From positions 3,348,001 through 3,412,000 of the forward strand of contig NC_088807.1 of assembly GCF_011386835.1 (NCBI RefSeq): a stretch of 64,000 bases of DNA. The letters run 5' to 3'. This stretch comes from Chrysemys picta bellii. Taxonomy: Eukaryota. Position numbers and translations under genes: made by a program. The notes under the pieces were generated by a model. It searched no databases. It was not told the DNA's origin and saw only the letters and a list, made by a program, of their open reading frames with translations. Below, one piece after another: positions 14,945 through 32,077 of the stretch. The stretch's first letter is position 1. Each line of letters starts with the position of its first letter.

Positions 14945-15130
14945 GTCTGCCGGTCATGTGACACGCTCGCCCCGCCCCTCTCCTGCCTTTCCCGCGCGAG
15001 CCGGCCAATCGCAGCGCGCCCCCAAGACGAGGCGGACGGGCCAATCAGAACAAAGAATCTGCCCCTCGCCCGAGCCGGCCCCTCCCCTGGAGACTGGTCG
15101 CTAAGGCGGGAGCCAGCTGGTTGCCATGGG
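14945..15130 (-). promoter_or_regulatory. SARS2 CpG-island promoter with two CCAAT boxes
   Basis: CpG-rich stretch directly upstream of the ATG; GGCCAATC cores at 15005-15009 and 15041-15045 fit NF-Y sites. Confidence 0.7.
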
Positions 15131-15268
15131 GACGGGAGGAAGGGGTGCTAAAGGACCAGGAGTAGAAGCCATCCCTCCACCCCCCTCGCAGCCCTAATCC
15201 CCAGCAACCCCTCCCCCCTCCACCCAAGGACACTGCCTCAGGGCAGGGGGAGACTCCCCCGATAGCCC

Positions 15269-15700
15269 CCTCCTGTACCCCATAGCCTGAGCAACACCTC
15301 CCAGCCCTCCCCAGGCCAGAACAGCTCCCCCAGGGAAACCCCCCGACCCAGAGACCCCTCCTGTACCCCACAGCCTGAGCAACACCCCCCAGCCCTCCCC
15401 AGGCCAGAATAGCTCCCCCAGGTAAACCCCCCACCCAGAGACCCCTCCTGTACCCCACAGCCTGAGCAACACTCCCCAGGCCAGAACAGCTCCCCCAGGG
15501 AAACCCCCCGACCCAGAGACCCCTCCTGTACCCCACAGCCTGAGCAACACCCCCCAGCCCTCCCCAGGCCAGAACAGCTCCCCCAGGGAAACCCCCCGAC
15601 CCAGAGACCCCTCCTGTACCCCCCAGCCTGAGCAACACCCCCCACCCCTCCCCAGGCCAGAACAGCTCCCCCAGGGGAAACCCCCCCACACCCAGAGACC
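15269..15700. repeat. C-rich tandem repeat, about 5 copies of 88 bp (one 76 bp)
   Basis: CCTCCTGTACCC recurs at about 15269, 15358, 15445, 15522, 15609. Confidence 0.88.
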
Positions 15701-16262
15701 CACAGTGCTCTCCCTCTCCCTGACTCCCCCATGTGACCCATCCTCAGAGCCCTCTTGTGTACCTCAATTGAGCCACACCCCAGAGATCCCCCCTCCAGCC
15801 AAGACTACCTCCATCCAGACTGAGTGACTCCCCAGTGCGCCATCACCCTGAGTGACTGCCCTGGAGACCCCCTGGTACCCTGCAGAGTCCCCCTATGTAC
15901 CACAGCCTGGTCAGCACTTCAACGGCCCCTCTCCCAGGAGCAGAGGAAGACACACCCCACGCCCCCAAGCCTGAGTGACTCTTCCAAAGAGACCCCATAG
16001 CCAGAGACACCCCCTCATATGCCCCAGGAACTAAGACTACAACTCAGAGCCCTTGCTCGGAACACAAATTCATCCCGTCTCTCAGAGAGGAGTTTGAATT
16101 TAATGAGCATGGTCTGCGTGTAAATATCTCACAACAGTACAGAGCAAGTAGTTGTGTCTCTGGAGGATATCTGCCATGACACAAATGCAGACGTGATTAA
16201 AACTCTTTTCCTACGAAGCCGGGAACTTGACAATCCCACGACATCTCTCAGCGCGGCGGCGC

Positions 16263-16642
16263 TTATTTCTTCTTCTGAACATGGGCGCAGTCATATTTCC
16301 CACGCACTATTTTGAGCTTCACCCCAGGCAAGTCCTGTGTCCTTCCACCTTCCACCAGCACAATGCTGTGCTCCTGCAAGTTGTGACCTTCTCCGGGAAT
16401 GAAGCAGATCACCTCCTTGCCGTTGCTGAGTCGCACCCGGGCGCACTTTCTGTTGGCAGAGTTGGGCTTCTTGGGCTTGCGAATCATGGTCTTGAGGACC
16501 ACTCCCTTGAGCTGGGGGTTGCCAAAGGTGGGGCCGAGTTTGGGTGGGGGAAACTTTGGCTTGCCCTTACGGTGTATCTGGTTGAGGGTTGCCATGGTGC
16601 GGGTTTCCAGATGGCCCAGAGCTTGGGTTAATGGCCATCTCC
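16263..16642 (-). CDS. MRPS12: MRPS12 terminal coding exon
   Basis: S12 signature PKKPNSA and GEGHNLQEH; acceptor TTCGTACCAG|GG; candidate ATTAAA poly(A) signal at 16099-16104. Confidence 0.97.
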
Positions 16643-18092
16643 CTGGTACGAAGGTATGAGGGAAAAGACTGATACCTATAAGGAAGAGAAGTTTCATTAA
16701 TTACCACTTGGGAACAATCCGACTAATCCAAGCTGGCATCCCTTTCTGTACCAATGGTCCATCTATTGCTGTAAGAGACCAGAACAATGGTCCATCTAGA
16801 ATAATGCCTAGCTCTTACCTAGTAGTTTTCATTAGTAGATCTCAAGGCACTTTGCAAAAGAGGTTATCATCGTCATCCCCATTTTACAAATGGGGAAACT
16901 GAGGCACGTGGAGGGAAAGTGACTTGCCCAAGATCATTCCGCAGGCCAGTGACAGAGCTAGAAATAGAACCCGGGTCTCCTGAGTTCCGCTCTAGTGCTC
17001 TCTCCACTAGGGATTATGTCTCATGTTGTGCAGGGCCCATCTAGTATAGCATCAGACATCTTTCTAATTCATTATCCCACCTCTTGCCATGCTAGATAGG
17101 ACCGTGGTACCCTGCCTCCAAACCGTGCTTCACAGAAAGGCATAGACCCCTGCCCAATTATTCAAATTGTGCAACCCTGGGATTATTTCTTCCTGTCCCC
17201 CAGCTGGTTGTTCCTGGAGCAACAAAAACGATAAGAGATTTAGAACAGAGTTTCTCAACGACAAGTACGTGGAGCGGCGCTGGTCCCTGAGATCTCTCAC
17301 ACACAGTTTAGGAGGCAGCAAGATGGTCCCTGGTATCGAAAAGGTTGAGAAACACTGATTTAGAAGACCTATGAGGAAAGTCTGAAAGAACTGGGCACGT
17401 TTAGTCTAGAGAAGAGAAGACTGAGGGAGAACAAATATGTACAAGGTTGCGGGGGGAGGGATAGCCCAGTGGTTTGAGCATTGGCCTGCTAAACCCAGCG
17501 CTGTGAGTTCAATCCTTAAAGGGGCCACTTAGGAATCTGGGGCAAAATCAGTACTTGGTCCTGCTAGTAAAGGTAGAGGTCTGGACTCAATGACCTTTCA
17601 GCGTCTCTTCCAGTTCTATGAGATAGGTATATCTCCATATATTGATAAAGACGACTAATCAATTGTTCTCCATTTCGTCTGAGGGGAGGACACGAAGGAA
17701 CCGGCTTTGTTTCAAGGGAGATTTTGGTTGTATATTAAGAAGCTTTCTAACTCCAAGCATGATTAAGTACCGGAACAGGTTATCAAGGGAGGTTGTGGAA
17801 CCCCTGTTGTTGTCTAACCTGGGCTTAAAAAGCTGTCAGGGATGGTCTATGGATAGTTACACCTGCCATCCTGCCTCAGCACGGGGGAAAGGCTAGATGA
17901 CTTGTCGAGGTCCCCTCCAGTCCCACATTTCTATGAAGACTGGGAGCCAGTATAGTTGCTAAATGCACTTTTTGCATCGCAAAGCAATACAGAGCAACAC
18001 TCCAGAATCAGTCTCGATGCAATGAACAGAAACAGATACGTACTCCATCTCAAAGGTGATGCCAGCAACCTCAGGAAACCCCTGCACGACAT
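16263..18092 (-). CDS. MRPS12: Mitochondrial ribosomal protein S12 (uS12m), about 142 aa, two coding exons
   Basis: 18044-18092 ([16 protein letters not shown], 49 nt, phase-1 donor A|GTACGT) plus 16263-16642 ([25 protein letters not shown]...[20 protein letters not shown]...GEGHNLQEH...[11 protein letters not shown]) give 429 nt in frame; canonical S12 motifs. In-frame ATG at 18101 could add 3 aa. Confidence 0.95.
17355..17935 (+). mobile_element. CR1 LINE 3' fragment interrupted by a tRNA-derived SINE (about 17451-17640)
   Basis: GTTTAGTCTAGAGAAGAGAAGACTGAGGG...CTAGATGAC...TTTCTATGA; SINE head GGGAGGGATAGCCCAGTGG...GAGTTCAATCC. Confidence 0.7.
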
Positions 18093-18143
18093 TCTCCGCA
18101 TTAAAAGCTCACTAAAGCCCCAGAGACCATGAATACAAGTCCC
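18044..18143 (-). CDS. MRPS12: MRPS12 first coding exon (5'UTR plus presequence)
   Basis: Strong acceptor CTTCTTGTTTTCCTTTCTTCCAG|; 49 coding nt keep frame with the last exon. Confidence 0.85.
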
Positions 18144-18271
18144 CTGGAAGAAAGGAAAACAAGAAGTTAATATTTCTGAAGGGCAGGAACTCCAGCTACC
18201 TCACGGATAGGCATGGTCTCAGTCAAGTGAGACAAGATGGTTTATGGGTTTAACTGACTACAGAAACTTAC

Positions 18272-18363
18272 CACTTTAAAAACCACTAGCCCAGAAGAAA
18301 AGCGAGTGAGAATTGTTACTCTTGCTGTACATGGCACGAGTCTGGCCAATCTCTGCCCCGTTC
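18272..18363 (-). other. Candidate alternative 5'UTR exon of MRPS12 containing an 18-codon uORF
   Basis: TTTTTGCCTAG| acceptor and GTG|GTAAGT donor; ATG 18332 to TAA 18276 (MYSKSNNSHSLFFWASGF*). Inclusion is inferred. Confidence 0.45.
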
Positions 18364-19335
18364 CTAGGCAAAAATGACACATCCAGGTTACAAAGCTGCT
18401 CCTTTGCCAAGCTCTATGCACCACAGACCCACTTTCCTAGAGCAGATTCCTGCAGATTCAGATTGAATGGTCCAAGGGTGCATGTGCATGGAAGGCTTAG
18501 CCTGTTCTCTACCTGTGTAGGGTCACACCTGTCCCACCAGGGCTGGGAATCTGACAATGGTTTTGAAAAAGGGGGCAAGGAAGGGGTGTGTGTGTGTGGG
18601 TGGGATTTTTCAGCAGGGCAAATCAGCTGGTTTGGGGAGGGGACAAATCCGCTACACCCCCAAAACAGCTGGGAAGGGAAGAACAGGACAGGCCCCAGAT
18701 GGAGAAAAAGGGGGTCACCCACATCCATGGAGGAGCAGCTAGGCGGGGACCACCAAGTGGAGAGGAAATGGGGTCCTCTCCCCAGCCCCAGAGTAGTAGT
18801 TGGGGGAGGAGGGGCAGCTGAGAGACAGGGCACTAAGTGGGGAGGGGAATCCCACTCCCAATCACAGGGCAGCAGCTGGGGGGGGGTAAGAGAGGACCCA
18901 GTGGGGGGGAAGCCGGCAGGAGAATGGGAGGTGGGTTCCCACGCCCCAGAGAAGCAGCTGGGGGGGGGGGGGGGAGAGAGGACCCGGTGGGGGGGGGAAG
19001 CCGGCAGGAGAATGGCAGGTGGGTTCCCACGCCCCAGAGAAGCAGCTGGGGGAGGGGAGGGGGAGGGGGGGGGACCCCCCCCCCACAGACCAGCAGTGAT
19101 GGGGTCACCGGGAGAGCACGGGGGGGTCCCCGCCAGCCCGAGCAGCAGCTGGGGGAGATGGAGGCGGCTGGGCGCGAGGCGGGACTGGAATGTTTGTGCC
19201 CCCCCCCCCGGGGAACACGTAGGGGGCGGGGCCAGGACCCTGGATGGGGGAGGGGGCTGTGTGTCCCCCCCCAATGCAGCGGTGGGGGTGGGGCGGCGCA
19301 GCCCCTCGCTCTCCTTCCCCCCCCTCCACACTGAC

Positions 19336-19520
19336 CTCACGCCTCAGCCGCCATCTTGCCGCCCCCACCGAGCGCTCGGCCCCGCCTCCCACTCTCTGAT
19401 TGGCTCCGACCGCGCCGCCTCTTGGTTGGTCCCGGCTGGGCTCGCTCGGGCGGGTAGGCCGGGCGCGGCTGTCGCTCAGGGAGCCTTGCTCCTCCTGATT
19501 GGCCGGGGAGAGTCAGGAGG
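19336..19520 (-). promoter_or_regulatory. MRPS12 promoter and non-coding exon 1 (YY1 motif, CCAAT boxes)
   Basis: CpG island; AAGATGGCGGC (YY1 consensus) at 19347-19357; CCAAT on minus at 19399-19403 and 19498-19502; donors GTGAGG (19340) and GTCAGT (19335). Confidence 0.7.
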
Positions 19521-23742: not shown

Positions 23743-23880
23743 TCAGTTGAGCTTCACCATGACTGTGGAGTTGGTGATCCGTGCGCCGTAGTGTCCTCGC
23801 CAGAAAAGAATGTCCTTCCCTTTGTGGAGGAAATGCACATACCGGACGCCGCGGCCGTACTGCCTGAACCGGTAGGACAC
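23743..23880 (-). CDS. Copy A exon 5 (terminal)
   Basis: [45 protein letters not shown]. Confidence 0.92.
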   Translation of the reverse strand: MSYRFRQYGRGVRYVHFLHKGKDILFWRGHYGARITNSTVMVKLN

Positions 23881-26800
23881 CTGGGAGGGAAGGAAAAGGA
23901 ACCCAAATTGATCTCTGGACCCTGTCACAAATCCATGGGCTCCAGAGAGAGGAGGTAGGGGCTACACAGACTGGGGAAGATATTCTTGCAGGGCAGGGGC
24001 TGGGCAAAACGGAATAACTGCTGTGCAGCGAGGGGGGGTCGGAGAGCAGGCGCCTGCCCCACAGTCCCCCCAGAGTAGTGGCCTCAGTTCCCTGTAAGGT
24101 GCATGGCCGCGCAGCAGCCTATTTAGTGCTGTGCAGGGGCTCAGGGAACCCGCCCGGCCGGGACCTGCCGCAGGCGGGGCGCCCCACCCCCAACTCAATC
24201 CCCAGACCTGCCATGGTCGGGGGAGGGGCGTCCTCAACCCAGCCCTATCCAGGACCTGCCTCGGCCAGGGAGAGAGGCGCCCCAGCCCTCCTGTGGCTGG
24301 GGGATGGGCGCCTATCCCATGGCCCCAGCCCCGGAGCTGCTGCAGCAGGGAGAGGGGCCTCTCCCCCAAACCCAAGTGCTGCTGTGGGGGGAGCCCTCAC
24401 TCCCTGCCATAGCCCCAGAGCACCCTCCTGCACCCCAAACCCCTCATCGCCAGCCCCACCCCAGAGCCTGGACCCTCAGCCAGCGCCCTCACCCCCTGCA
24501 CCCCAACCTTCTGCCCCAGCCCTGAGCCCCCTCCCACACATCCCTTCCATATTGGTGCACAGAACCAGGGTGGATACAAATCAATGGTTTTAAAAAAAAA
24601 AAAAAAATCTGATTTTTTTGATAAAATGCTTTTTGAGGAAAAAACTTATCTAAAGCTAGTTTTAATTACGATATCTTTGAGCTGTAACGTATCTCATCAT
24701 GGAATAGGGATTATACCTTCTAATTCTATAGTATGAGACAATATATTCATGTCATGTTGAAGAAAAGTTTTGTAAATGAGTTCCAATAGTTCATGGATTA
24801 GGGACCCAATCTTACAGGCTTCCAGGGGCTTCTGTATAGATTATTTGGGTCAGAGGTGGGCAAACTACGGCCCGTGGGTCCGTCCTGTCCGACCCTGGAG
24901 CTCCCGGCCGGGGACGCTAGCTCCCAGCCCCTCCCCTGCTGTCCCCCGTCCCCCACAGCCTCAGCTCGCCATGCCGCCAGCGGTGGGGCTCTGAACTCCG
25001 GTTGGGCAGCGCGGCTGTGAGAGCCGCCGGCCTGCCCCGGTGCTCTAGACTGCATGGTGGCATGGCTGGCTCCGGCCGGGCGGCGCGGCTGCCAGTCCTG
25101 GTGCTCTGAGCATGGTAAGGGGGCGGAGAGCAGGGGGGTTGGATAAGGAGCAGAGTGTCCCAGGGGCCAGTCAGGGGACAGGGAACAGGGGGTGGTTGGA
25201 TGGTGTGGAGGTTCTGGGGTGGGGGGTTGGTCAGGGGATGGGGAACACAGGAGTTGGATAGTCGTGGGAGTCCCGGGGGAGCCTGTCAGAGGGCAGGGGG
25301 GTGGATAGGGGTCGGGGCAGTCAGGGGACAAGGAGCGGCGGGGTTGGATGGGTCACGGGTTCTGAGGGGGGCGGGAAGTGGGAGGGGGCGGGGGACAGGC
25401 TGTTTGCCGAGACACAGCCTTCCCTACCCGTCTCTCCATACAGTTTCGGAATCCCGATGTGGCCCTTAGGCCAAAAAGTTTGCCCACCCTGATTTAGGTC
25501 TTTCTATCTACCCAATGGGACTCAGTGCTCAGTCTAGAAGATACCATCAGAGATGCTTAGTTTTGCAGTTCTCAAACTGGATTTGTGTCTCCAGAGATAA
25601 CATGCTTGTTAACAGCAAAAATGTTTTTAAATAAAAATATATATATAGAGAGAGAGGTGAGAAATAACAGACCTCAACCCTATTGTCCCTCTGCAAATTT
25701 GTGTACACACAGTCATTCTCTTACGTCTCTCTCTAAAAGTGCAAAGTTTCAAGAAGTTCAATGAATAGAAGGTTGTTGGGGGCGGAACAGATCTGGACAA
25801 GGAGAAGAAGTCTGGAGATACATGTGAGAAGGGAGGGAGAGGCAGTAGAAACAAAAGTGAAACTGTTTGAGCAGCATAATCCAGAAATCTTGAGCGTAGC
25901 CTTCATTGATTTGAGATCTACCATACCATTCTCTCACTAGAAGGGAAAACCTATAATGGCAGCAAGCCATAAGAGAGACCCAATTTGGGTTTCATCTATC
26001 TGAGTTGTGAGGAATATGTATTAAGATTATACCAACCAACAAGAATGCACTTTTATGTTGAAATACATGATTTAAATCACTAGTCAGGAAGACTTGATTT
26101 AATCACGATTTAAATCAAATCCACCCTGCACATAACAAAATTCATTCTGCACATGGGTGGGAAAAATTAAAGGGAGCTCTGGTGGTGACTCCCATCCCAC
26201 AGGTCTGGGCCCGGCTCCAGCCGCTTGCAGAATTCGGAGGAGCCCGCTAGAGCGTCACGTAACACGAGTGTCCGTGCACAGGTGGGGCCATTCCCACCTC
26301 CTTCCTGGCCCTGGTGCAGCTGGAAGCAGAACTTTTCCTGCCGAGGGGGGCAGGCAGGAATAGTTTGGGGGGAGGATGAGCGCCCACTAGCCCTGGCCAT
26401 CTGCCGCCTGTGGTGGGCTAGTGGATAGAGGACTGGATGTCAGGAGACCCGTGTTCTATTCCTCTCTCTGCCACTGCCACCCGCGCCTCCACTCCATAAT
26501 AAAACATACATAATTTTACAAATTACGCCCACTTCATCCCTACCGCTTTTCCATGGTAGATCTCAAAGCGCTTTACAATAGAGCTTGGTATCGTTATCCC
26601 CCTTCCACAGGGAAACGGGGGCACAGGGAGGGGAAGTGACTTGCCCAAAGTCAACCCAGTGGCTGAGTCGGTTCTAGAACCCAGGTGTCCTGACTCCCAG
26701 TCCCCAAATGTTCCCAGAGAGCTGACAACGGAGCCGGCTCACCTGGTGATACTGCGAGTCATTCGACTGTTCTAAGCGATCGGGGTTGGCCTGGAATTCA

Positions 26801-29800
26801 GCGATTACAGTTGTTCTGTTGGCAGCCAGGAGCTTGACGCAGATGGAGTATACACCGCCAGCGCCTTGCCGGGCGCCCCACCTGTGGGATGGGAACAGAC
26901 GTTGGGGAAAAAGGAACCTCAGGGGGCAGCAGGAGGGAGACAGGACACAGCACCCCCAAATATAGATCGTAAGAGGAATCCTGGGAACACACACAGACAA
27001 ATCCAACACATGCAGCACCACCGGATTTTTGGTTCCCATCAATCAGGGGATTGCACCAGCATCTTAGCTCCAAGCACTGTAACATCCTCACCCGCTGGTC
27101 TTGTCTAGCCCAGCAACTTCAGGGAAGCCCGACTACAATCCTAGCCAGCAAGTCCGAGAGCAGACGTGACCTGCGACGTGCATTTGACGCAAGCCCCTGA
27201 CCAAGAGTTGGGCGGGAGAAACTCACTGTTAAAAATCCAACCGTTCTCACTGCTTTAATTGAGGCCTAACAGGGCTCCCAACCCACATCTCTGGGTCCTC
27301 CGAGGGGACCTCCAGCTAAAAAGCAGATCAAACGAGGTGCAACAGGCTTGATATATTTAGGGCTTAAAAAACAACAACCCCAATACAAACCCCCAAACTC
27401 TTTGATTCTGAAGCACAGGTAGGGGCCCATTTTTTTTCAGCAGGTCACCATTAAGGCCTCTAGGGAGAAGAGGGTGAAACTTACCAATCGGAGATGTAGA
27501 TTTCCGGTTGGTAGTTATCCAACAGTTCTTCCCACAACCCCTCCTCTAGAAGATCTACCATCTGCGATTTGACACACCACCTACAGAGGGGGAAAGGAAA
27601 CCCTAATGACATATTGCAATAGCACCTAACTGAGATCAAAGCCACATTGTGTTGGGCGCAGAACAGACTCTGTGGACGCTAGGGGGAAAAAAGGGGTATT
27701 AGTGGACAGGTGTTGAAATCCTGCTGTAGATAAGGCAGCTGTGGGTTTAACGTGTTGGCAGGTCAAGATGAACTCTAGGAAGAGACAATCACGGTCCCAC
27801 AGAGTTCACGGTGCAGACATGGTGGGCAAAGGGTGGGAGGGGAAACCGAGGCACAGACAGAGGAAGTCGTTTTTGCTCACGGTCACCCAGCAGAGCCAGG
27901 AACAGAGCTCAGCTGTTCAAGCTTCCAGGCACTGCCCCAGGACAGCTCCCTGTGTAGACAGGCAAAGCGGCCATAAACTATGATTTAAACTCATGGGGTC
28001 AGTTTCCCCCAGTGCAAATAATGTCTGTTATAGGAGTTTGCTGGGGCAGCTACGCCTGGGGCTGGAATCGGGGCAAATCAGCCGTGCAGAGAAGGCCTCG
28101 TAAATCTGGAGTGACACCGTTCCCAGTTCTCCTCTGCCAGGCACCTTGGGTCGATACCGACACCTGGGTAGAGTGTGTGTGTTTGTGTGTCATGACGACA
28201 CAAGGGCAGCACAGAGTCAGGGCCTGCATCTGATCTTGGTTATACTGCTGCAAATCCAGAGCAACTCCAGATTTACTTAGGGCTTGTCTACACTGGCAAG
28301 TTTCTGCGCAGTGAAGCAGCTTTTTGCGCTCAAACTGCAGACGTGTACACACTGCCACCTTGTGCGCCAAACTCCTCAGTTGCAGCGCTGCAAAAAACCC
28401 ACCCCGAGAAGAGTCGTGAGGCTGTTTGCACAGAGGCTCCAGCGCTCATTGCCAGTGTAGACACTTGATTGCTATTGCGCTGTAATTGGCTTCCGGAGCT
28501 GTCCCTTAATCCCTCAAGTGACATCCCAGCATTTCCCCCGTTCCCTGCCTCAGGACTGGTTGCATCCTGCCACTGTCTGAACTCAGACAGCCTCTGTCCC
28601 CCAAAACACACTGTGTCTCCCCCCCCCTCCATACACACACACACTCCCTGTCACACACTCTCCCCCCTCCCCACCCAGTTGAAAAGCAGCTGGCAATGTA
28701 GTAGGATGCCCATGGAACAGTGGGATTGGGAAACCTGCATCATGTGACGCTGTGCCTCCCCCATGAGGCATTGCAAACCCTTCCCAAAGCCCCCTGCGGC
28801 CAGTTGCACAGGGGGAAGCTCCCACAATGCACTGCTGTCTTTGCCCCTTGCAAGAGCTGCTAATGTGGACGTGCTCCAGCGTCACAAGGAGCACAGTGTG
28901 GACACACAACAGCGGTTTAATTCCAGCGCTTTAATAAAAGTGACAAGGAGTCCGGTGGCACCTTAAAGACTAACAGATTGATTTGGGTAAAGCTTATACC
29001 CAAATCAATCCGTTAGTCTTTAAGTTGCCACCAGACTCCTTGTTTTTGTGGATACTGACTAACACGGCTACCCCATGATACTTAATAAAAGCGGTATAAC
29101 TTGTGGTGCAGAAACTTGCCAGTGTAGACACACCCTTAGACCACGTCCACAGTAGGAGCACTTTGCCGGTATAAGAATCCCAGGATACCCTGTTGGCAAC
29201 GAAAACCACCCTCCCTGAGCAACACAAACTCTCCTAGTAACAATGCACCGTTCTGTATCACTGAATCCACACTGGCTAGCACAACTCTCTTCCCAACGCC
29301 TGACCGACAGATCTGTGCCGGCAGAAATCTGTAGCGTAGCCCTAGCCTAAATCCAGAGCCACTCCGGATTTACTGGTGTGTACATATATTTGGGACATGA
29401 CGGTACAAGGTGCAGGGCAGACTCTGGCCTGGCACCTCTGGGTCTCATTTATGCTGGGTCAATCCAGAGTGACTCTGGATTCACAGGGGAACACGCAACA
29501 TCAGGATCGGTCTGGCCTTTGGAGAACAGGTAGCACTCTGCCGCATGGGGAAGGTGGGGGGCAAACAGGAAGGCCCAGGGGACAGACTCACTGAAAGGAT
29601 GAGACGAAGCAGGTCTGGGCCGGGGCGCCCTCGACCGGGCAGAGGTTCCCTTCCACATTCCAGCCATTGCCCCCATGCTCCACCTGCCAGTGAGAGAACT
29701 GATCTGTGGGAAGACGATGCGTCAAAGGGGGGGTGTAAGGTGTGGTAGGAGCTGGTTTGATGGGGTGGGGGGCGACATCCTGGTGGGCACCCGACACCCT

Positions 29801-31006
29801 GGTGGGCACCCATTCCCATTCCTATGGCTGATCTTATGGTCCCCCCCCCCCGCCCTAGACTCTCCTCGCCTCCTCCCATAACCCCCCCGCTTTCCCCCAT
29901 CCCTCTCCCTACAACCCCCATGTTCCCATCCATCCCTACCCCCCTTTCCTTACCCCCTCCCATAATCTCCCCCGCCCCGTCCGGCACCCACCCTGCCCGC
30001 AGGGGTTCCGGACCAGGTTGCGCCCGAAGGGCTCCAGGAGGCCGATCCGGCTCCACTGCGGTGAGGGGCAGAGGCGGGCGGCCACTAGGATGGCCCCCAA
30101 GCGCGGCCACCTCTCGCCCTGCAGCCGCCAGACCGTGGGCCCGTCGATGAGGTCCCGCCAGCGGCGACACACCAGCCGGCAGCGGGTCACCAGGGCGCGG
30201 CCCGGGACCCAGCTCAGGATCAGCGCCAGCAGCTCGTCCGGCAGCCGGTTCAGCTCCAGCGGGGCCGGGAGAGATGGGGGCGCCGACTGTGGCCTGTCCG
30301 GGGAAAACGGGAGCGCCGAGAGCCGCGCCCTCTCCGGCCTTGCCCCGAAAAACAGGAGCCCGACCTGCCGCTCCAACTGCCGCCTGCTCTCCTGCTGCTG
30401 CTCCCACAGCCGCTGCCGCTTCAACTGCCGCCTGCTCTCCTGCTGCTGTTCAAACTGCCGCTCCAACTGCCGCCTTCTCTCCTGCTGCTGCAACTGGCGC
30501 TCCAACTGCCACCTGCTCTCTTGCTGCTCCATCAACTGCCTCTCCCGCTCCATCAACTGCTGCTCCCGCAGCTCCCACTGCTCCCTGCTCTCCTGCTGCT
30601 GCTCCATCAACTGCCTCTCCCGGTCCATCAACTGCTGCTCCCGCAGCTCCAACTGCTCCCTGCTCTCCTGCTGCTGCTCCATCAACTGCCTCTCCCGGTC
30701 CATCAACTGCTGCTCCCGCAGCTCCCACTGCTCCCTGCTCTCCTGCTGCTGCTCCATCAACTGCCTCTCCCGGTCCATCAACTGCTGCTCCCGCAGCTCC
30801 AACTGCTCCCTGCTCTCCTGCTGCTGCTGCAACTGCCGCCTGCTCTCCTGCTCCATCAACTGCTGTTTGCTCTCCTGCTGCTGCTGCAACTGCCGCTCGC
30901 TCTCCTGCTCCATCAACTGCCGCCTGCTCTCCTGCTGCTGCTGCAACTGCCGCTCGCTCTCCTGCTGCTGCTCCATCAACTGCCGCTCGCTCTCCTGCTG
31001 CTGCAT
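23743..31006 (-). CDS. FBXO17/FBXO27-like F-box/FBA lectin, copy A, with N-terminal Q/E-rich repeat (about 499 aa in the unspliced exon-1 model)
   Basis: Exons 29992-31006, 29592-29703, 27485-27580, 26743-26881, 23743-23880 are GT-AG and in frame. F-box LPDELLALILSWVP...[13 protein letters not shown]; FBA motifs [33 protein letters not shown]. The start is uncertain (see findings). Confidence 0.85.
24566..26128. mobile_element. Non-autonomous hAT element in intron 4 of copy A (orthologous at 37082-38014 in B; right-end remnant at about 50470-50807 in C)
   Basis: TIR CAGGGTGGAT, TSD CACAGAAC/CACATAAC, TGATTTAAATCA subterminal repeats. Confidence 0.8.
24851..25491. mobile_element. hAT MITE nested in the previous element, copy A only
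   Basis: TIR CAGAGGTGGGCAAACT, TSD ATTTGGGT/ATTTAGGT; empty site at 37361. Confidence 0.8.
26743..26881 (-). CDS. Copy A exon 4
   Basis: 139 nt, [46 protein letters not shown]. Confidence 0.92.
27485..27580 (-). CDS. Copy A exon 3
   Basis: 96 nt, [31 protein letters not shown]. Confidence 0.92.
28945..29077. mobile_element. Penelope-like hairpin fragment, copy A only
   Basis: GGTGGCACCTTAAAGACTAAC...GTTAGTCTTTAAGTTGCCACC inverted repeat, recalled as typical of turtle Penelope remnants. Confidence 0.5.
29592..29703 (-). CDS. Copy A exon 2
   Basis: 112 nt, [37 protein letters not shown]. Confidence 0.92.
29992..31006 (-). CDS. Copy A exon 1 (Q/E repeat, linker, F-box)
   Basis: ATG at 31006; open frame to donor CAG G|GTGGGT; 338 codons + 1 nt. 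Confidence 0.7.
30362..31006 (-). repeat. CAG/GAG-rich repeat with a 4 x 75-nt core (30527-30826)
   Basis: QQQESREQ[L/W]ELREQQLM[D/E]RERQLME x4, flanked by shorter QQQESxRQL units. Confidence 0.92.
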
Positions 31007-31085
31007 GTCCGCGGGAGCCCGGCTCTCTCTGCCGCACAACGGCCTGGCTCGCTCAGGCCCAGCTCTCGCTCCTCGCTGCACCCGC

Positions 31086-31181
31086 TCACGGGACCCAGCT
31101 CAGGATCTGCGCCAGGAGCTCGTCCGGGAGCGGGTTCAGGTCCAGCAGGACCGGGGGAGCCCGGCTCTCCGACTGCCCCAT
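31086..31181 (-). other. Truncated F-box 5' fragment (31 codons + TGA) upstream of copy A: uORF or alternative first exon
   Basis: [31 protein letters not shown], identical in protein to the start of copy C; GTGAGC donor overlaps the stop. Confidence 0.75.
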
Positions 31182-31876
31182 GGCCGGGGGGCGGCCTGGC
31201 TCGCTCAGGCCCAGTTACTTTCCCCGCTGCATCCGCTCATGTGATCCCGGCCCCGCCTTGGAGCCGCCCCGGCCTCGTTTACACGGTGCAAAGCGAGCAC
31301 CGGATTCCCCCCTTGCCCGCCAGGGGGTGCCTGGAACAGGCTCCGGGTTCCCCGCTCCGCCCCGCTGCGGGGTCTGACACCGGCTCTGGTCCAGGCTGCC
31401 AGCCGGCAAAGCCCCCACACCGGAAAAGAAGCTGGGAGATGGAGGGGGGTGAAAAGTGAGGGGGGGGGGCTCAGGACTCCTGGGTTCTCTCCCCAGCTGC
31501 AGGCGAGCGGGGGGGGGGGGGGTCTAGTGGTTAGAGGGGGGCCAATGCCGGGGGTGAGGAGAGAAGGGGGGGACCAGGTGGGGGGGGGGCGCTGTGCGGG
31601 GGAGGGGGCACAGAGGAGTGGGGGGGGGCACCAGGGACAGCGGGATTGGGGGTGACTCCGATTTACACCAGCCGGCGACCAGAGCCGGTGTCAGACCCCG
31701 CAGCGGGGCTGAGCGGGGAACCCGGAGCCTGTTCCAGGCGCCCCCTGGCGGGCAAGGGGGGAATCCGGTGCTCGCTTTGCACCGTGTAAACGAGGCCGGG
31801 GCGGCTCCAAGATCCCATGAGCGGATGCGGCGAGGAGCGGGAGCTGGGCCGGAGCGAGCCAGGCCGCCCCCCGGCC

Positions 31877-32077
31877 ATGGGGCAGGCAGAGAGCCGGGCT
31901 CCCCCGGCCATGGGGCAGCCGGAGCGGCGGGGGTCGGAGTTGGAGCCCCTGATTTCAGGGCAGGCGGGACAGGGCGCGGCGCTCGGAGCTGACCCCGCTC
32001 CCGGACGGGCTCCTGGCGCGGAGCCTGAGCTGGGTCCCGGCCGCGCCCTGGGGACCCGCTGCCGGTGTAGTGTATGA
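31877..32077 (+). pseudogene. Inverted, frameshifted fragment of an F-box exon 1
   Basis: Starts MGQAESRAPP; a shifted frame reads [28 protein letters not shown]; 31680-31890 is the reverse complement of about 31160-31390. Confidence 0.8.

What the first reader, a model, noticed from the sequence alone, without database searches (positions are those of the whole stretch)
30362..31006. A ~215-aa Q/E/R-rich repeat sits in frame with, and upstream of, the F-box of copy A
Seen: from ATG 31006 the frame runs through QQQES-type repeats and a non-repetitive linker (GLLFFGARPERARLSALPFSPDRPQS) straight into the F-box and the normal exon-1 donor. Copies B and C have nothing here. The ancestral start ATG GGG CAG TCG GAG AGC has decayed to TTG TGC GGC AGA GAG AGC just upstream, so this model lacks the MGQSES N-terminus. 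Established: FBXO27 is N-myristoylated, which places it on membranes for lysophagy. Inference: an F-box lectin with a long coiled-coil or single alpha-helix (involucrin/trichohyalin-like composition) in place of the lipid anchor. I do not know this architecture in the family. Caveat: CAG/GAG repeats are open in several frames by chance.
Basis: partly seen in the sequence, partly recalled or inferred. Interest (0 to 1): 0.75.

Follow-up and report, generated by a model that had tools for sequence, protein, structure and literature searches.

The report
Glutamine-rich repeat on turtle F-box lectin
One of three neighbouring painted-turtle genes for a sugar-binding ubiquitin-ligase adaptor carries a 645-base tandem repeat in its first exon that would add a 215-residue helical tail and remove the lipid-anchor signal; the repeat is real, shared with two other pond-turtle genera and already in the public annotation, but nothing yet shows it is translated or useful.

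Summary
On the minus strand, ATG 31006 opens a 215-codon Q/E/R/L-rich tandem array (31006-30362). It runs in frame through a 36-residue linker into the F-box (30253-30125) and the exon-1 donor (29992). Copies B and C lack it.

- **Species and annotation:** the genome is painted turtle. NCBI already models exactly this protein (XP_023965573.3, 499 aa, "F-box only protein 17-like").
- **Relatives:** the array sits at the same place in Trachemys (203 codons, in frame) and twice in Emys. In Emys both copies are 1 nt out of frame with their own start codon. Mauremys has only a 38-residue non-repetitive extension.
ATG 31006 is itself the ancestral start codon. Codon 2 changed from Gly to Gln, so MGQSES became MQQQES. 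The "decayed start" is a small upstream insertion.
- **Structure:** AlphaFold gives one helix for residues 2-217, but heptad and ER/K salt-bridge signatures are weak.
- **Open frame:** it is not evidence of coding, because four of six frames have no stop.
- **Signs of relaxed constraint:** the Emys frameshifts, loss of the promoter in Trachemys, a strong-context 31-codon upstream ORF in Chrysemys, and FBA dN/dS of 0.66-1.05.

No transcript evidence was reachable. I read this as an emydid-specific in-frame exon-1 minisatellite of unproven function. Interest is modest.

The parts
30362..31006 (-). Tandem array of 215 codons (Q 33%, E 21%, R 17%, L 12%). It starts at the orthologous start codon, with codon 2 = CAG (Gln) instead of GGG (Gly).
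30254..30361 (-). Non-repetitive 36-residue linker (GLLFFGARPERAR...). It is homologous, in the same frame, to part of the 38-residue N-terminal extension of the Mauremys orthologue.
30125..30253 (-). F-box domain (Pfam PF12937/PF00646, residues 252-294 of the exon-1 frame).
29992..31006 (-). Coding part of exon 1 of paralogue A (338 codons plus 1 base; donor G|GTGGGT).
29592..29703 (-). Exon 2 (start of the FBA domain), with AG acceptor and GTGAGT donor.
27485..27580 (-). Exon 3 (FBA).
26743..26881 (-). Exon 4 (FBA; carries the Chrysemys-specific QGAGGVY stretch).
23743..23880 (-). Exon 5 (end of the FBA domain, including stop TGA).
31007..31088 (-). The A lineage's own 5' leader ('unit 2'), 89% identical to the leader of Emys copy 2. 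It begins at the junction GGGTCCCG|TGAGCGG and contains the 23-27 nt start-like insertion (31039-31011).
31086..31181 (-). Upstream 31-codon ORF: an intact MGQSES start in GCCATGG context, plus the first half of an F-box, then TGA. GTGAGC at 31088 could also serve as a splice donor. This segment is Chrysemys-specific.
31182..31398 (-). Promoter and leader segment, 96.5% identical to that of copy C (measured over 31398-31089).

Best explanation
This is a lineage-specific minisatellite inside the first coding exon of paralogue A. A is one of three tandem FBXO17/FBXO27-like F-box/FBA genes next to MRPS12 in the painted turtle.

The array grew between the ancestral start codon and a short N-terminal extension that the A lineage already had. 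It arose before the Chrysemys/Trachemys/Emys split and after the split from Mauremys. All its units are multiples of 3 nt and keep the ancestral frame (GAG AGC = Glu-Ser). So in Chrysemys and Trachemys it reads in frame from the old start into the F-box.

If the mRNA is translated from ATG 31006, the product is a 499-residue F-box/FBA protein. Its first ~215 residues are predicted to be one long alpha-helix. Having Gln instead of Gly at position 2, it cannot be N-myristoylated.

Shown: the anatomy, the orthology of the start codon, presence and length variation in three genera, the intact gene structure, and the helix prediction. Inferred: that it is translated. No in-frame ATG lies between the array and the F-box, so any F-box product of this exon must start in or before the array.

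My reading is that the array is a tolerated, near-neutral expansion in a fast-evolving, weakly constrained paralogue, not a designed replacement of the lipid anchor.
For: Public annotation and gene structure:
- The same model is in the public annotation (P0001 = XP_023965573.3).
- The gene has five exons with canonical GT-AG sites, summing to 1500 nt.

Start codon and origin:
- ATG 31006 aligns with all other starts, with GGG to CAG at codon 2 in Chrysemys and Trachemys only.
- The Mauremys orthologue has MGQGGS plus a 38-residue non-repeat extension, whose FGERPGGTR stretch matches the Chrysemys linker FGARPERAR in the same frame.

Presence in relatives:
- All four species show the same C-B-A arrangement. 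In the two loci that reach that far (Emys; this window) MRPS12 follows A.
- Trachemys A has a 203-codon array in frame, modelled as 485 aa.
- Emys has two array-bearing copies of exon 1.
- Indels among the arrays are 3 to 24 nt and all multiples of 3, apart from one 1-nt deletion in each Emys copy.

Structure:
- AlphaFold gives a single helix for residues 2-217, pLDDT 70-91.

Near-neutral drift:
- In the well-aligned Chrysemys-Trachemys part, 15 of 19 substitutions are nonsynonymous, about the random expectation.
- ChrA FBA dN/dS is 0.66-1.05, against 0.26-0.54 for B orthologue pairs.
Against: - No transcript or peptide evidence could be reached. A search for protein fragments spanning the repeat/linker/F-box junction found none at high identity.
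- Four of six frames are stop-free, so the ORF itself is uninformative.
- A simulation says random substitutions should have hit a stop in the Q/E frame in 95% of trials. But the non-coding antisense frames also stayed open against 54-72% expectations, so the test does not discriminate.
- In Emys both arrays are out of frame with their canonical ATG.
- Trachemys lacks the ~1.2 kb that holds the promoter.
- In Chrysemys a 31-codon upstream ORF in optimal Kozak context precedes ATG 31006 by 175 nt.
Confidence: 0.6

Rival explanations
1. One reading: an adaptive new architecture, in which a long coiled coil or single alpha-helix functionally replaces the N-myristoyl membrane anchor of an F-box lectin. 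This could change its localisation or make it oligomeric.
For: - Gly2 is lost exactly where the array starts.
- A helix is predicted with high confidence over 216 residues.
- The array has persisted without stops in the F-box frame in four arrays of three genera.
- The central block has a 7-7-11 hydrophobic spacing, with resultant 0.41 at period 3.57.
Against: - Overall amphipathic periodicity is within shuffle range (0.21 against a 95th percentile of 0.28).
- Salt-bridge pairs are not enriched and only 40% of residues are charged, so it is not an ER/K SAH.
- Most substitutions in the array are nonsynonymous.
- Emys has frameshifts and Trachemys has lost the promoter.
- The ChrA FBA domain evolves with omega near 1.
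Confidence: 0.15
2. The array is not part of the main protein in Chrysemys. Translation starts at the intact MGQSES codon at 31181, and the array is spliced out: donor GTGAGC at 31088, acceptor AG at 30288-30287, exon resuming at TCG 30286 in the F-box frame. Alternatively the array is only leader sequence behind an inhibitory upstream ORF.
For: - ATG 31181 is in GCCATGG context and its ORF ends in phase 0 exactly at a GTGAG donor.
- A pyrimidine-rich tract and an in-frame AG precede 30286.
Against: - The upstream unit is absent from Trachemys and Emys, so it cannot explain the array there.
- The spliced product would carry a duplicated half F-box.
- NCBI's model does not use this splice.
- No transcript data are available either way.
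Confidence: 0.12
3. Paralogue A is a decaying or silent copy. The array is a GC-rich minisatellite that expanded in a former coding exon, and its open frame is a by-product of composition and of 3-nt-phased units.
For: - Antisense frames are equally open.
- Both Emys copies carry 1-nt frameshifts, and the F-box of Emys copy 2 has dN/dS above 1.
- The promoter region is missing in Trachemys.
- ChrA FBA omega is 0.66-1.05, and its dS to TraA is 0.12, ten times that of the B pair.
- The region is rearrangement-prone, with an inverted relic and partial duplicates.
Against: - There is no stop or frameshift anywhere in the 499 codons of ChrA, and all splice sites are intact.
- The F-box scores normally against Pfam.
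- The FW pair of the sugar pocket is kept in ChrA.
- Trachemys keeps the whole exon-1 frame.
Confidence: 0.2

Closest known systems
FBXO27 (Fbs3) / FBXO17, the FBA-domain F-box proteins next to MRPS12-SARS2
   Same: - F-box followed by an FBA sugar-binding domain.
- Tandem paralogues beside MRPS12.
- The sister copies B and C start with an MGxxxS myristoylation-type motif, like FBXO27.
   Different: - Copy A has Gln at position 2.
- It has a 215-residue repeat plus a 36-residue linker before the F-box.
- Mammalian FBXO17/27 have no such extension (PMC6389600 describes a long N-terminal region only for Fbs1).
FBXO2 (Fbs1) N-terminal region
   Same: It is a family precedent for an extra N-terminal segment ahead of the F-box (PMC6389600).
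   Different: It is a different clade and chromosome. The Fbs1 segment is not a tandem Q/E/R repeat, and no sequence similarity was found.
Coding minisatellites of the involucrin / trichohyalin type
   Same: - Q/E/R-rich tandem units in multiples of 3 nt.
- Predicted long helix.
- Copy number differs between related species.
   Different: There is no homology: Pfam finds nothing on the array. The gene family and genomic context are unrelated, so the resemblance is compositional only.
ER/K single alpha-helix domains (myosin VI/X, caldesmon)
   Same: Predicted as an isolated long helix rich in E and R.
   Different: - Only 40% of residues are charged and 33% are Gln.
- i/i+3-4 opposite-charge pairs are not enriched.
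- 20% of residues are hydrophobic.

Membership tests
FBA-type F-box protein (FBXO17/27 clade) | F-box domain | tested here: met
   Pfam PF12937 E=5e-11 and PF00646 E=6e-10 at residues 252-294 of the exon-1 frame.
FBA-type F-box protein (FBXO17/27 clade) | FBA (F-box associated) domain downstream, encoded by intact exons | tested here: met
   PF04300 is recorded for P0001. Exons 2-5 were located and have canonical splice sites.
FBA-type F-box protein (FBXO17/27 clade) | Genomic position beside MRPS12/SARS2 | tested here: met
   MRPS12 lies downstream of the orthologue in Emys. MRPS12/SARS2 were noted at 14945-19520 of this window.
N-myristoylated FBXO27-like protein | Gly at position 2 (MGxxxS/T) | tested here: not met
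   Codon 2 is CAG (Gln) at 31003-31001. It is GGG in B, C, Mauremys and Emys copy 1.
ER/K single alpha-helix | Very high E+K+R content with enriched i/i+4 opposite charges and few hydrophobic residues | tested here: not met
   Charged fraction is 0.40. There are 30 opposite-charge pairs against 34 +/- 4.7 in shuffles. L/M/W/F/V make up about 20%.
Canonical coiled coil | Heptad (or hendecad) hydrophobic seam and self-association | tested here: inconclusive
   The resultant is 0.41 at period 3.57 in residues 60-165, but 0.21 overall, within shuffle range. No measure of self-association was obtained here.
Coding minisatellite (in-frame VNTR) | Tandem units in multiples of 3 nt, in frame with flanking coding sequence, copy number varying between relatives | tested here: met
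   - All TRF periods are multiples of 3.
- The array is in frame with the F-box in all four arrays, and with the canonical ATG in Chrysemys and Trachemys.
- Lengths are 215, 203, about 266 and about 162 codons.
Coding minisatellite (in-frame VNTR) | Demonstrated translation | not testable with these tools
   No transcript or peptide data were reachable. The fragment search found nothing.

The most novel reading that the evidence does not exclude
Pond turtles (Emydidae) turned the codons of the myristoylation motif of an F-box lectin into a tandem array. In Chrysemys and Trachemys this now makes a roughly 30-nm helical N-terminal arm in place of the lipid anchor. That would relocate the ligase adaptor or make it multivalent. 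In Chrysemys its output would be gated by an upstream ORF that still encodes the ancestral myristoylatable peptide.
Probability: 0.12. Interest if true: 0.55.

Novelty: new variant of a known kind. Interest (0 to 1): 0.3.

Why it matters
If translated, this would be the first FBA-family F-box protein with a long helical repeat arm instead of the N-myristoyl anchor that places FBXO27 on endomembranes. It would also be a clean natural case of a targeting signal being lost while the same codons are amplified into a new protein segment.

It is also a compact example of how a coding minisatellite is born and drifts, from 0 to 266 codons across four turtle genera. As it stands it is an annotated but unstudied, lineage-restricted feature of a weakly constrained paralogue, so the expected pay-off is modest.

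Tried and rejected
- **Homodimer prediction** of residues 1-215, two copies: no verdict (score 0.00). It is not evidence either way.
- **Protein search on residues 1-250 alone**: returned only the query itself.
- **Pfam on the array** at E up to 10: nothing.
- **ESM Atlas by features**: no usable hit. The structural neighbours are generic long helices (ERM, LRSAM1, ODF2L, SMC-like) at TM 0.38-0.51, which I judged uninformative.
- **Search for short protein fragments** spanning the repeat/linker/F-box/exon-2 junction, as a proxy for assembled transcripts: no high-identity fragment.
- **Exact look-ups** of P0003, P0008 and P0009: not on record.
- **Stop-gain simulation**: p is about 0.045 for the Q/E frame, but the antisense control frames behave similarly, so I rejected it as proof of coding constraint.
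- **Origin of the repeat unit** from the GQSES codons: 14/17 identity, P about 0.04. This is suggestive only. There is no significant similarity to the Mauremys extension.
- **Literature searches**: found nothing on this architecture.
- **Earlier-findings look-up by sequence**: blank, which means nothing here.
- **Exon joining:** The spliced product was used only as the public protein P0001 returned by the search. The dN/dS counts were summed exon by exon.

Full report
**What is there**

On the minus strand, ATG 31006-31004 opens a frame of 338 codons that ends at the exon-1 donor G|GTGGGT (29992|29991). The first 215 codons (31006-30362) are a tandem array.
- Tandem Repeats Finder gives periods of 75, 57, 54, 48, 30 and 21 nt, all multiples of three. 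The 75-nt unit is present 4.9 times at 93% identity.
- A 27-nt core motif occurs 13 times in 30374-31003 and nowhere else in the 64 kb, against 0 expected.
- The translation is Q 33%, E 21%, R 17%, L 12%, S 6%, M 6%.
- A 36-residue non-repetitive linker follows, then an F-box at residues 252-294 (Pfam E = 5e-11).
- Paralogues B (start 43918) and C (start 55056) have the exact MGQSES start and no array.

The Q/E frame has no stop, but neither do the three antisense frames, and one other sense frame has a single stop. The open frame by itself therefore carries no weight.

**Whose gene it is**

Earlier notes of the scan named the genome as painted turtle. The protein search confirmed it. The exon-1 translation is 100% identical over its full length to NCBI's "F-box only protein 17-like [Chrysemys picta bellii]", 499 aa (P0001 = XP_023965573.3). 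That gene occupies exactly 31006-23743.

I located the other four exons: 29703-29592, 27580-27485, 26881-26743 and 23880-23743. All have canonical AG/GT sites, and the five exons sum to 1500 nt. I found no paper on it.

**Relatives**

I fetched the orthologous loci of Emys orbicularis (L001), Trachemys scripta (L002) and Mauremys reevesii (L003). All show the same C-B-A tandem; MRPS12 follows A in the Emys locus and in this window, while the Trachemys and Mauremys loci end inside gene A.
- **Trachemys A** has the same start (MQQQES...) and a 203-codon array in frame with the same linker and F-box. It is modelled as 485 aa.
- **Emys** has two array-bearing copies of exon 1.
  - Copy 1 starts MGQGES (Gly2 kept) and runs 66 codons before a 1-nt deletion. 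NCBI starts its 355-aa model (P0002 = XP_065277162.1) at an internal ATG.
  - Copy 2 has the Chrysemys-type linker and an array of about 266 codons. A 1-nt deletion five codons after its MQQQE start puts that ATG out of frame, although the array, linker and F-box remain one open frame.
- **Mauremys A** (P0008) has MGQGGS followed by a 38-residue non-repetitive extension. Its FGERPGGTR segment aligns, in the same frame, with the Chrysemys linker FGARPERAR.

So the A lineage had a short N-terminal extension before the emydid/geoemydid split. The minisatellite expanded in the emydid stem, since it is shared by Emys, Trachemys and Chrysemys. Indels among the arrays are 3-24 nt, all multiples of three, apart from the two single-base deletions in Emys.

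**Correction of the 'decayed start'**

In the alignment of seven start regions, ATG 31006 lines up with the start codon of every paralogue and orthologue. The A lineage shares the context GCGGACATG. Codon 2 is GGG everywhere except Chrysemys A and Trachemys A, where it is CAG.

MQQQES is therefore the old MGQ(S/G)ES with Gly2 replaced by Gln. GAG AGC (Glu-Ser) is read in the same frame as in the ancestor. The look-alike TTG TGC GGC AGA GAG AGC (31039-31022) belongs to a 23-27 nt insertion in the leader that is partly shared with Trachemys.

Because co-translational N-myristoylation needs Gly2 (established knowledge; FBXO27 myristoylation per PMC6389600), a protein started at 31006 cannot carry the anchor. 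The repeat core resembles the GQSES codons (14/17 identity, P about 0.04), which hints that the array grew out of the start region, but this is weak.

**The Chrysemys-specific upstream unit**

Positions 31398-31089 are 96.5% identical to the promoter, leader and first 93 coding bases of copy C. This stretch carries ATG 31181 in GCCATGG context and a 31-codon ORF (MGQSES... to ...ILSWVP) that stops at TGA 31088-31086. There the sequence joins, non-homologously, the A lineage's own leader, which is 89% identical to the leader of Emys copy 2.
- Neither Emys nor Trachemys has this unit.
- If transcription starts upstream of 31181, ribosomes meet a strong upstream ORF 175 nt before ATG 31006.
- The same spot is also a good donor (CCC|GTGAGC). 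I could not test either possibility.

**Is the array under coding constraint?**

I could not show it.
- Between Chrysemys and Trachemys, 15 of 19 substitutions in the securely aligned part are nonsynonymous. About three synonymous changes are expected at random and four were seen.
- In a three-species simulation with CpG-aware random placement of 37 events, 95% of trials create a stop in the Q/E frame and none is observed. But the three antisense frames also stayed open against 54%, 55% and 72% expectations, so the null model is inadequate and the test does not discriminate.
- Multiple-of-three indels follow automatically from 3-nt-phased units.
- The best argument for translation is structural. 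There is no ATG between the array and the F-box, so any F-box protein made from this exon must start in or before the array.

Several features point the other way, to a weakly constrained paralogue in a rearrangement-prone spot:
- Both Emys arrays have lost frame with their start codon.
- The F-box of Emys copy 2 has dN/dS above 1.
- Trachemys lacks the equivalent of window 32227-31045, including the CpG-island promoter.
- The FBA exons of Chrysemys A have dN/dS of 0.66-1.05 against all comparators. Their dS of 0.12 to Trachemys A is ten times that of the B pair.
- An inverted, frameshifted relic of exon 1 lies at 31877-32071 on the plus strand.

**What the array would look like as protein**

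AlphaFold2 without an alignment gives one uninterrupted helix for residues 2-217, with pLDDT 70-91. The rest is poorly modelled for want of an alignment.

Sequence signatures of the two proposed helix types are weak:
- Hydrophobic positions have a resultant of 0.21 at 3.6 residues per turn overall (shuffle 95th percentile 0.28). It reaches 0.41 only in the central 25-residue units, which have a 7-7-11 spacing.
- Opposite-charge i/i+3-4 pairs are not enriched (30 against 34 +/- 4.7).
- Only 40% of residues are charged.

So 'long helix' is supported as a prediction. 'ER/K SAH' fails its defining features, and 'coiled coil' is undecided. Pfam finds no family on the array.

**Verdict**

The finding is a real in-frame exon-1 minisatellite. 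It is specific to emydid turtles and sits at the ancestral start of an FBXO17/27-like paralogue that has lost its myristoylation glycine in Chrysemys and Trachemys. It is already annotated by NCBI but undescribed in the literature I could search.

Whether it is translated, and whether the helix does anything, is open. The balance of evidence favours a tolerated, drifting expansion over an engineered replacement of the lipid anchor. I rate interest at 0.3 and novelty as a new variant of a known kind.

Noticed in passing
L001:12858-14375 and L001:9780-10545: Emys orbicularis carries two array-bearing copies of exon 1, 3.2 kb apart, inside one annotated gene. The NCBI model (P0002) joins the first copy to the last 14 codons of the second. 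The F-box of copy 2 has many nonsynonymous changes (LRWVP, TCCR).
   Followed up: partly
L002:22646-23020 versus window 31045-32227: Trachemys scripta gene A lacks the ~1.2 kb that holds the inverted relic, the CpG-island promoter and most of the leader in Chrysemys. About 400 nt of unrelated sequence, with an inverted-repeat element, abuts the start codon.
   Followed up: partly
window 31877-32071 (+): This is an inverted, frameshifted relic of the exon-1 start (MGQAESRAPPAMGQPERR...), head-to-head with gene A's promoter. A similar inverted relic lies upstream of Emys copy 2 (L001:11960-12238), so it is old.
   Followed up: partly
P0003 (UniProt A0A8C3I0R2_CHRPI, older Chrysemys assembly): This Ensembl model has an A-like FBA body (3 residues different from this window's A) behind a normal MGQSES exon 1 that matches neither B nor C of this window exactly. 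It could be an assembly collapse, or a haplotype in which the A body has a myristoylatable start and no array.
   Followed up: partly
window 26743-26881 and 23743-23880 (exons 4 and 5 of A): Chrysemys A has a private QGAGGVY stretch where relatives have EDCGCEY or RCGCE-Y. It keeps the FW pair near the C-terminus, while B copies and Emys A have FR.
   Followed up: no
window 44300-45000: A tandem array with a period of about 74 nt lies upstream of copy B, seen as many staggered self-matches at 45000-45181 in the B-versus-C comparison.
   Followed up: no
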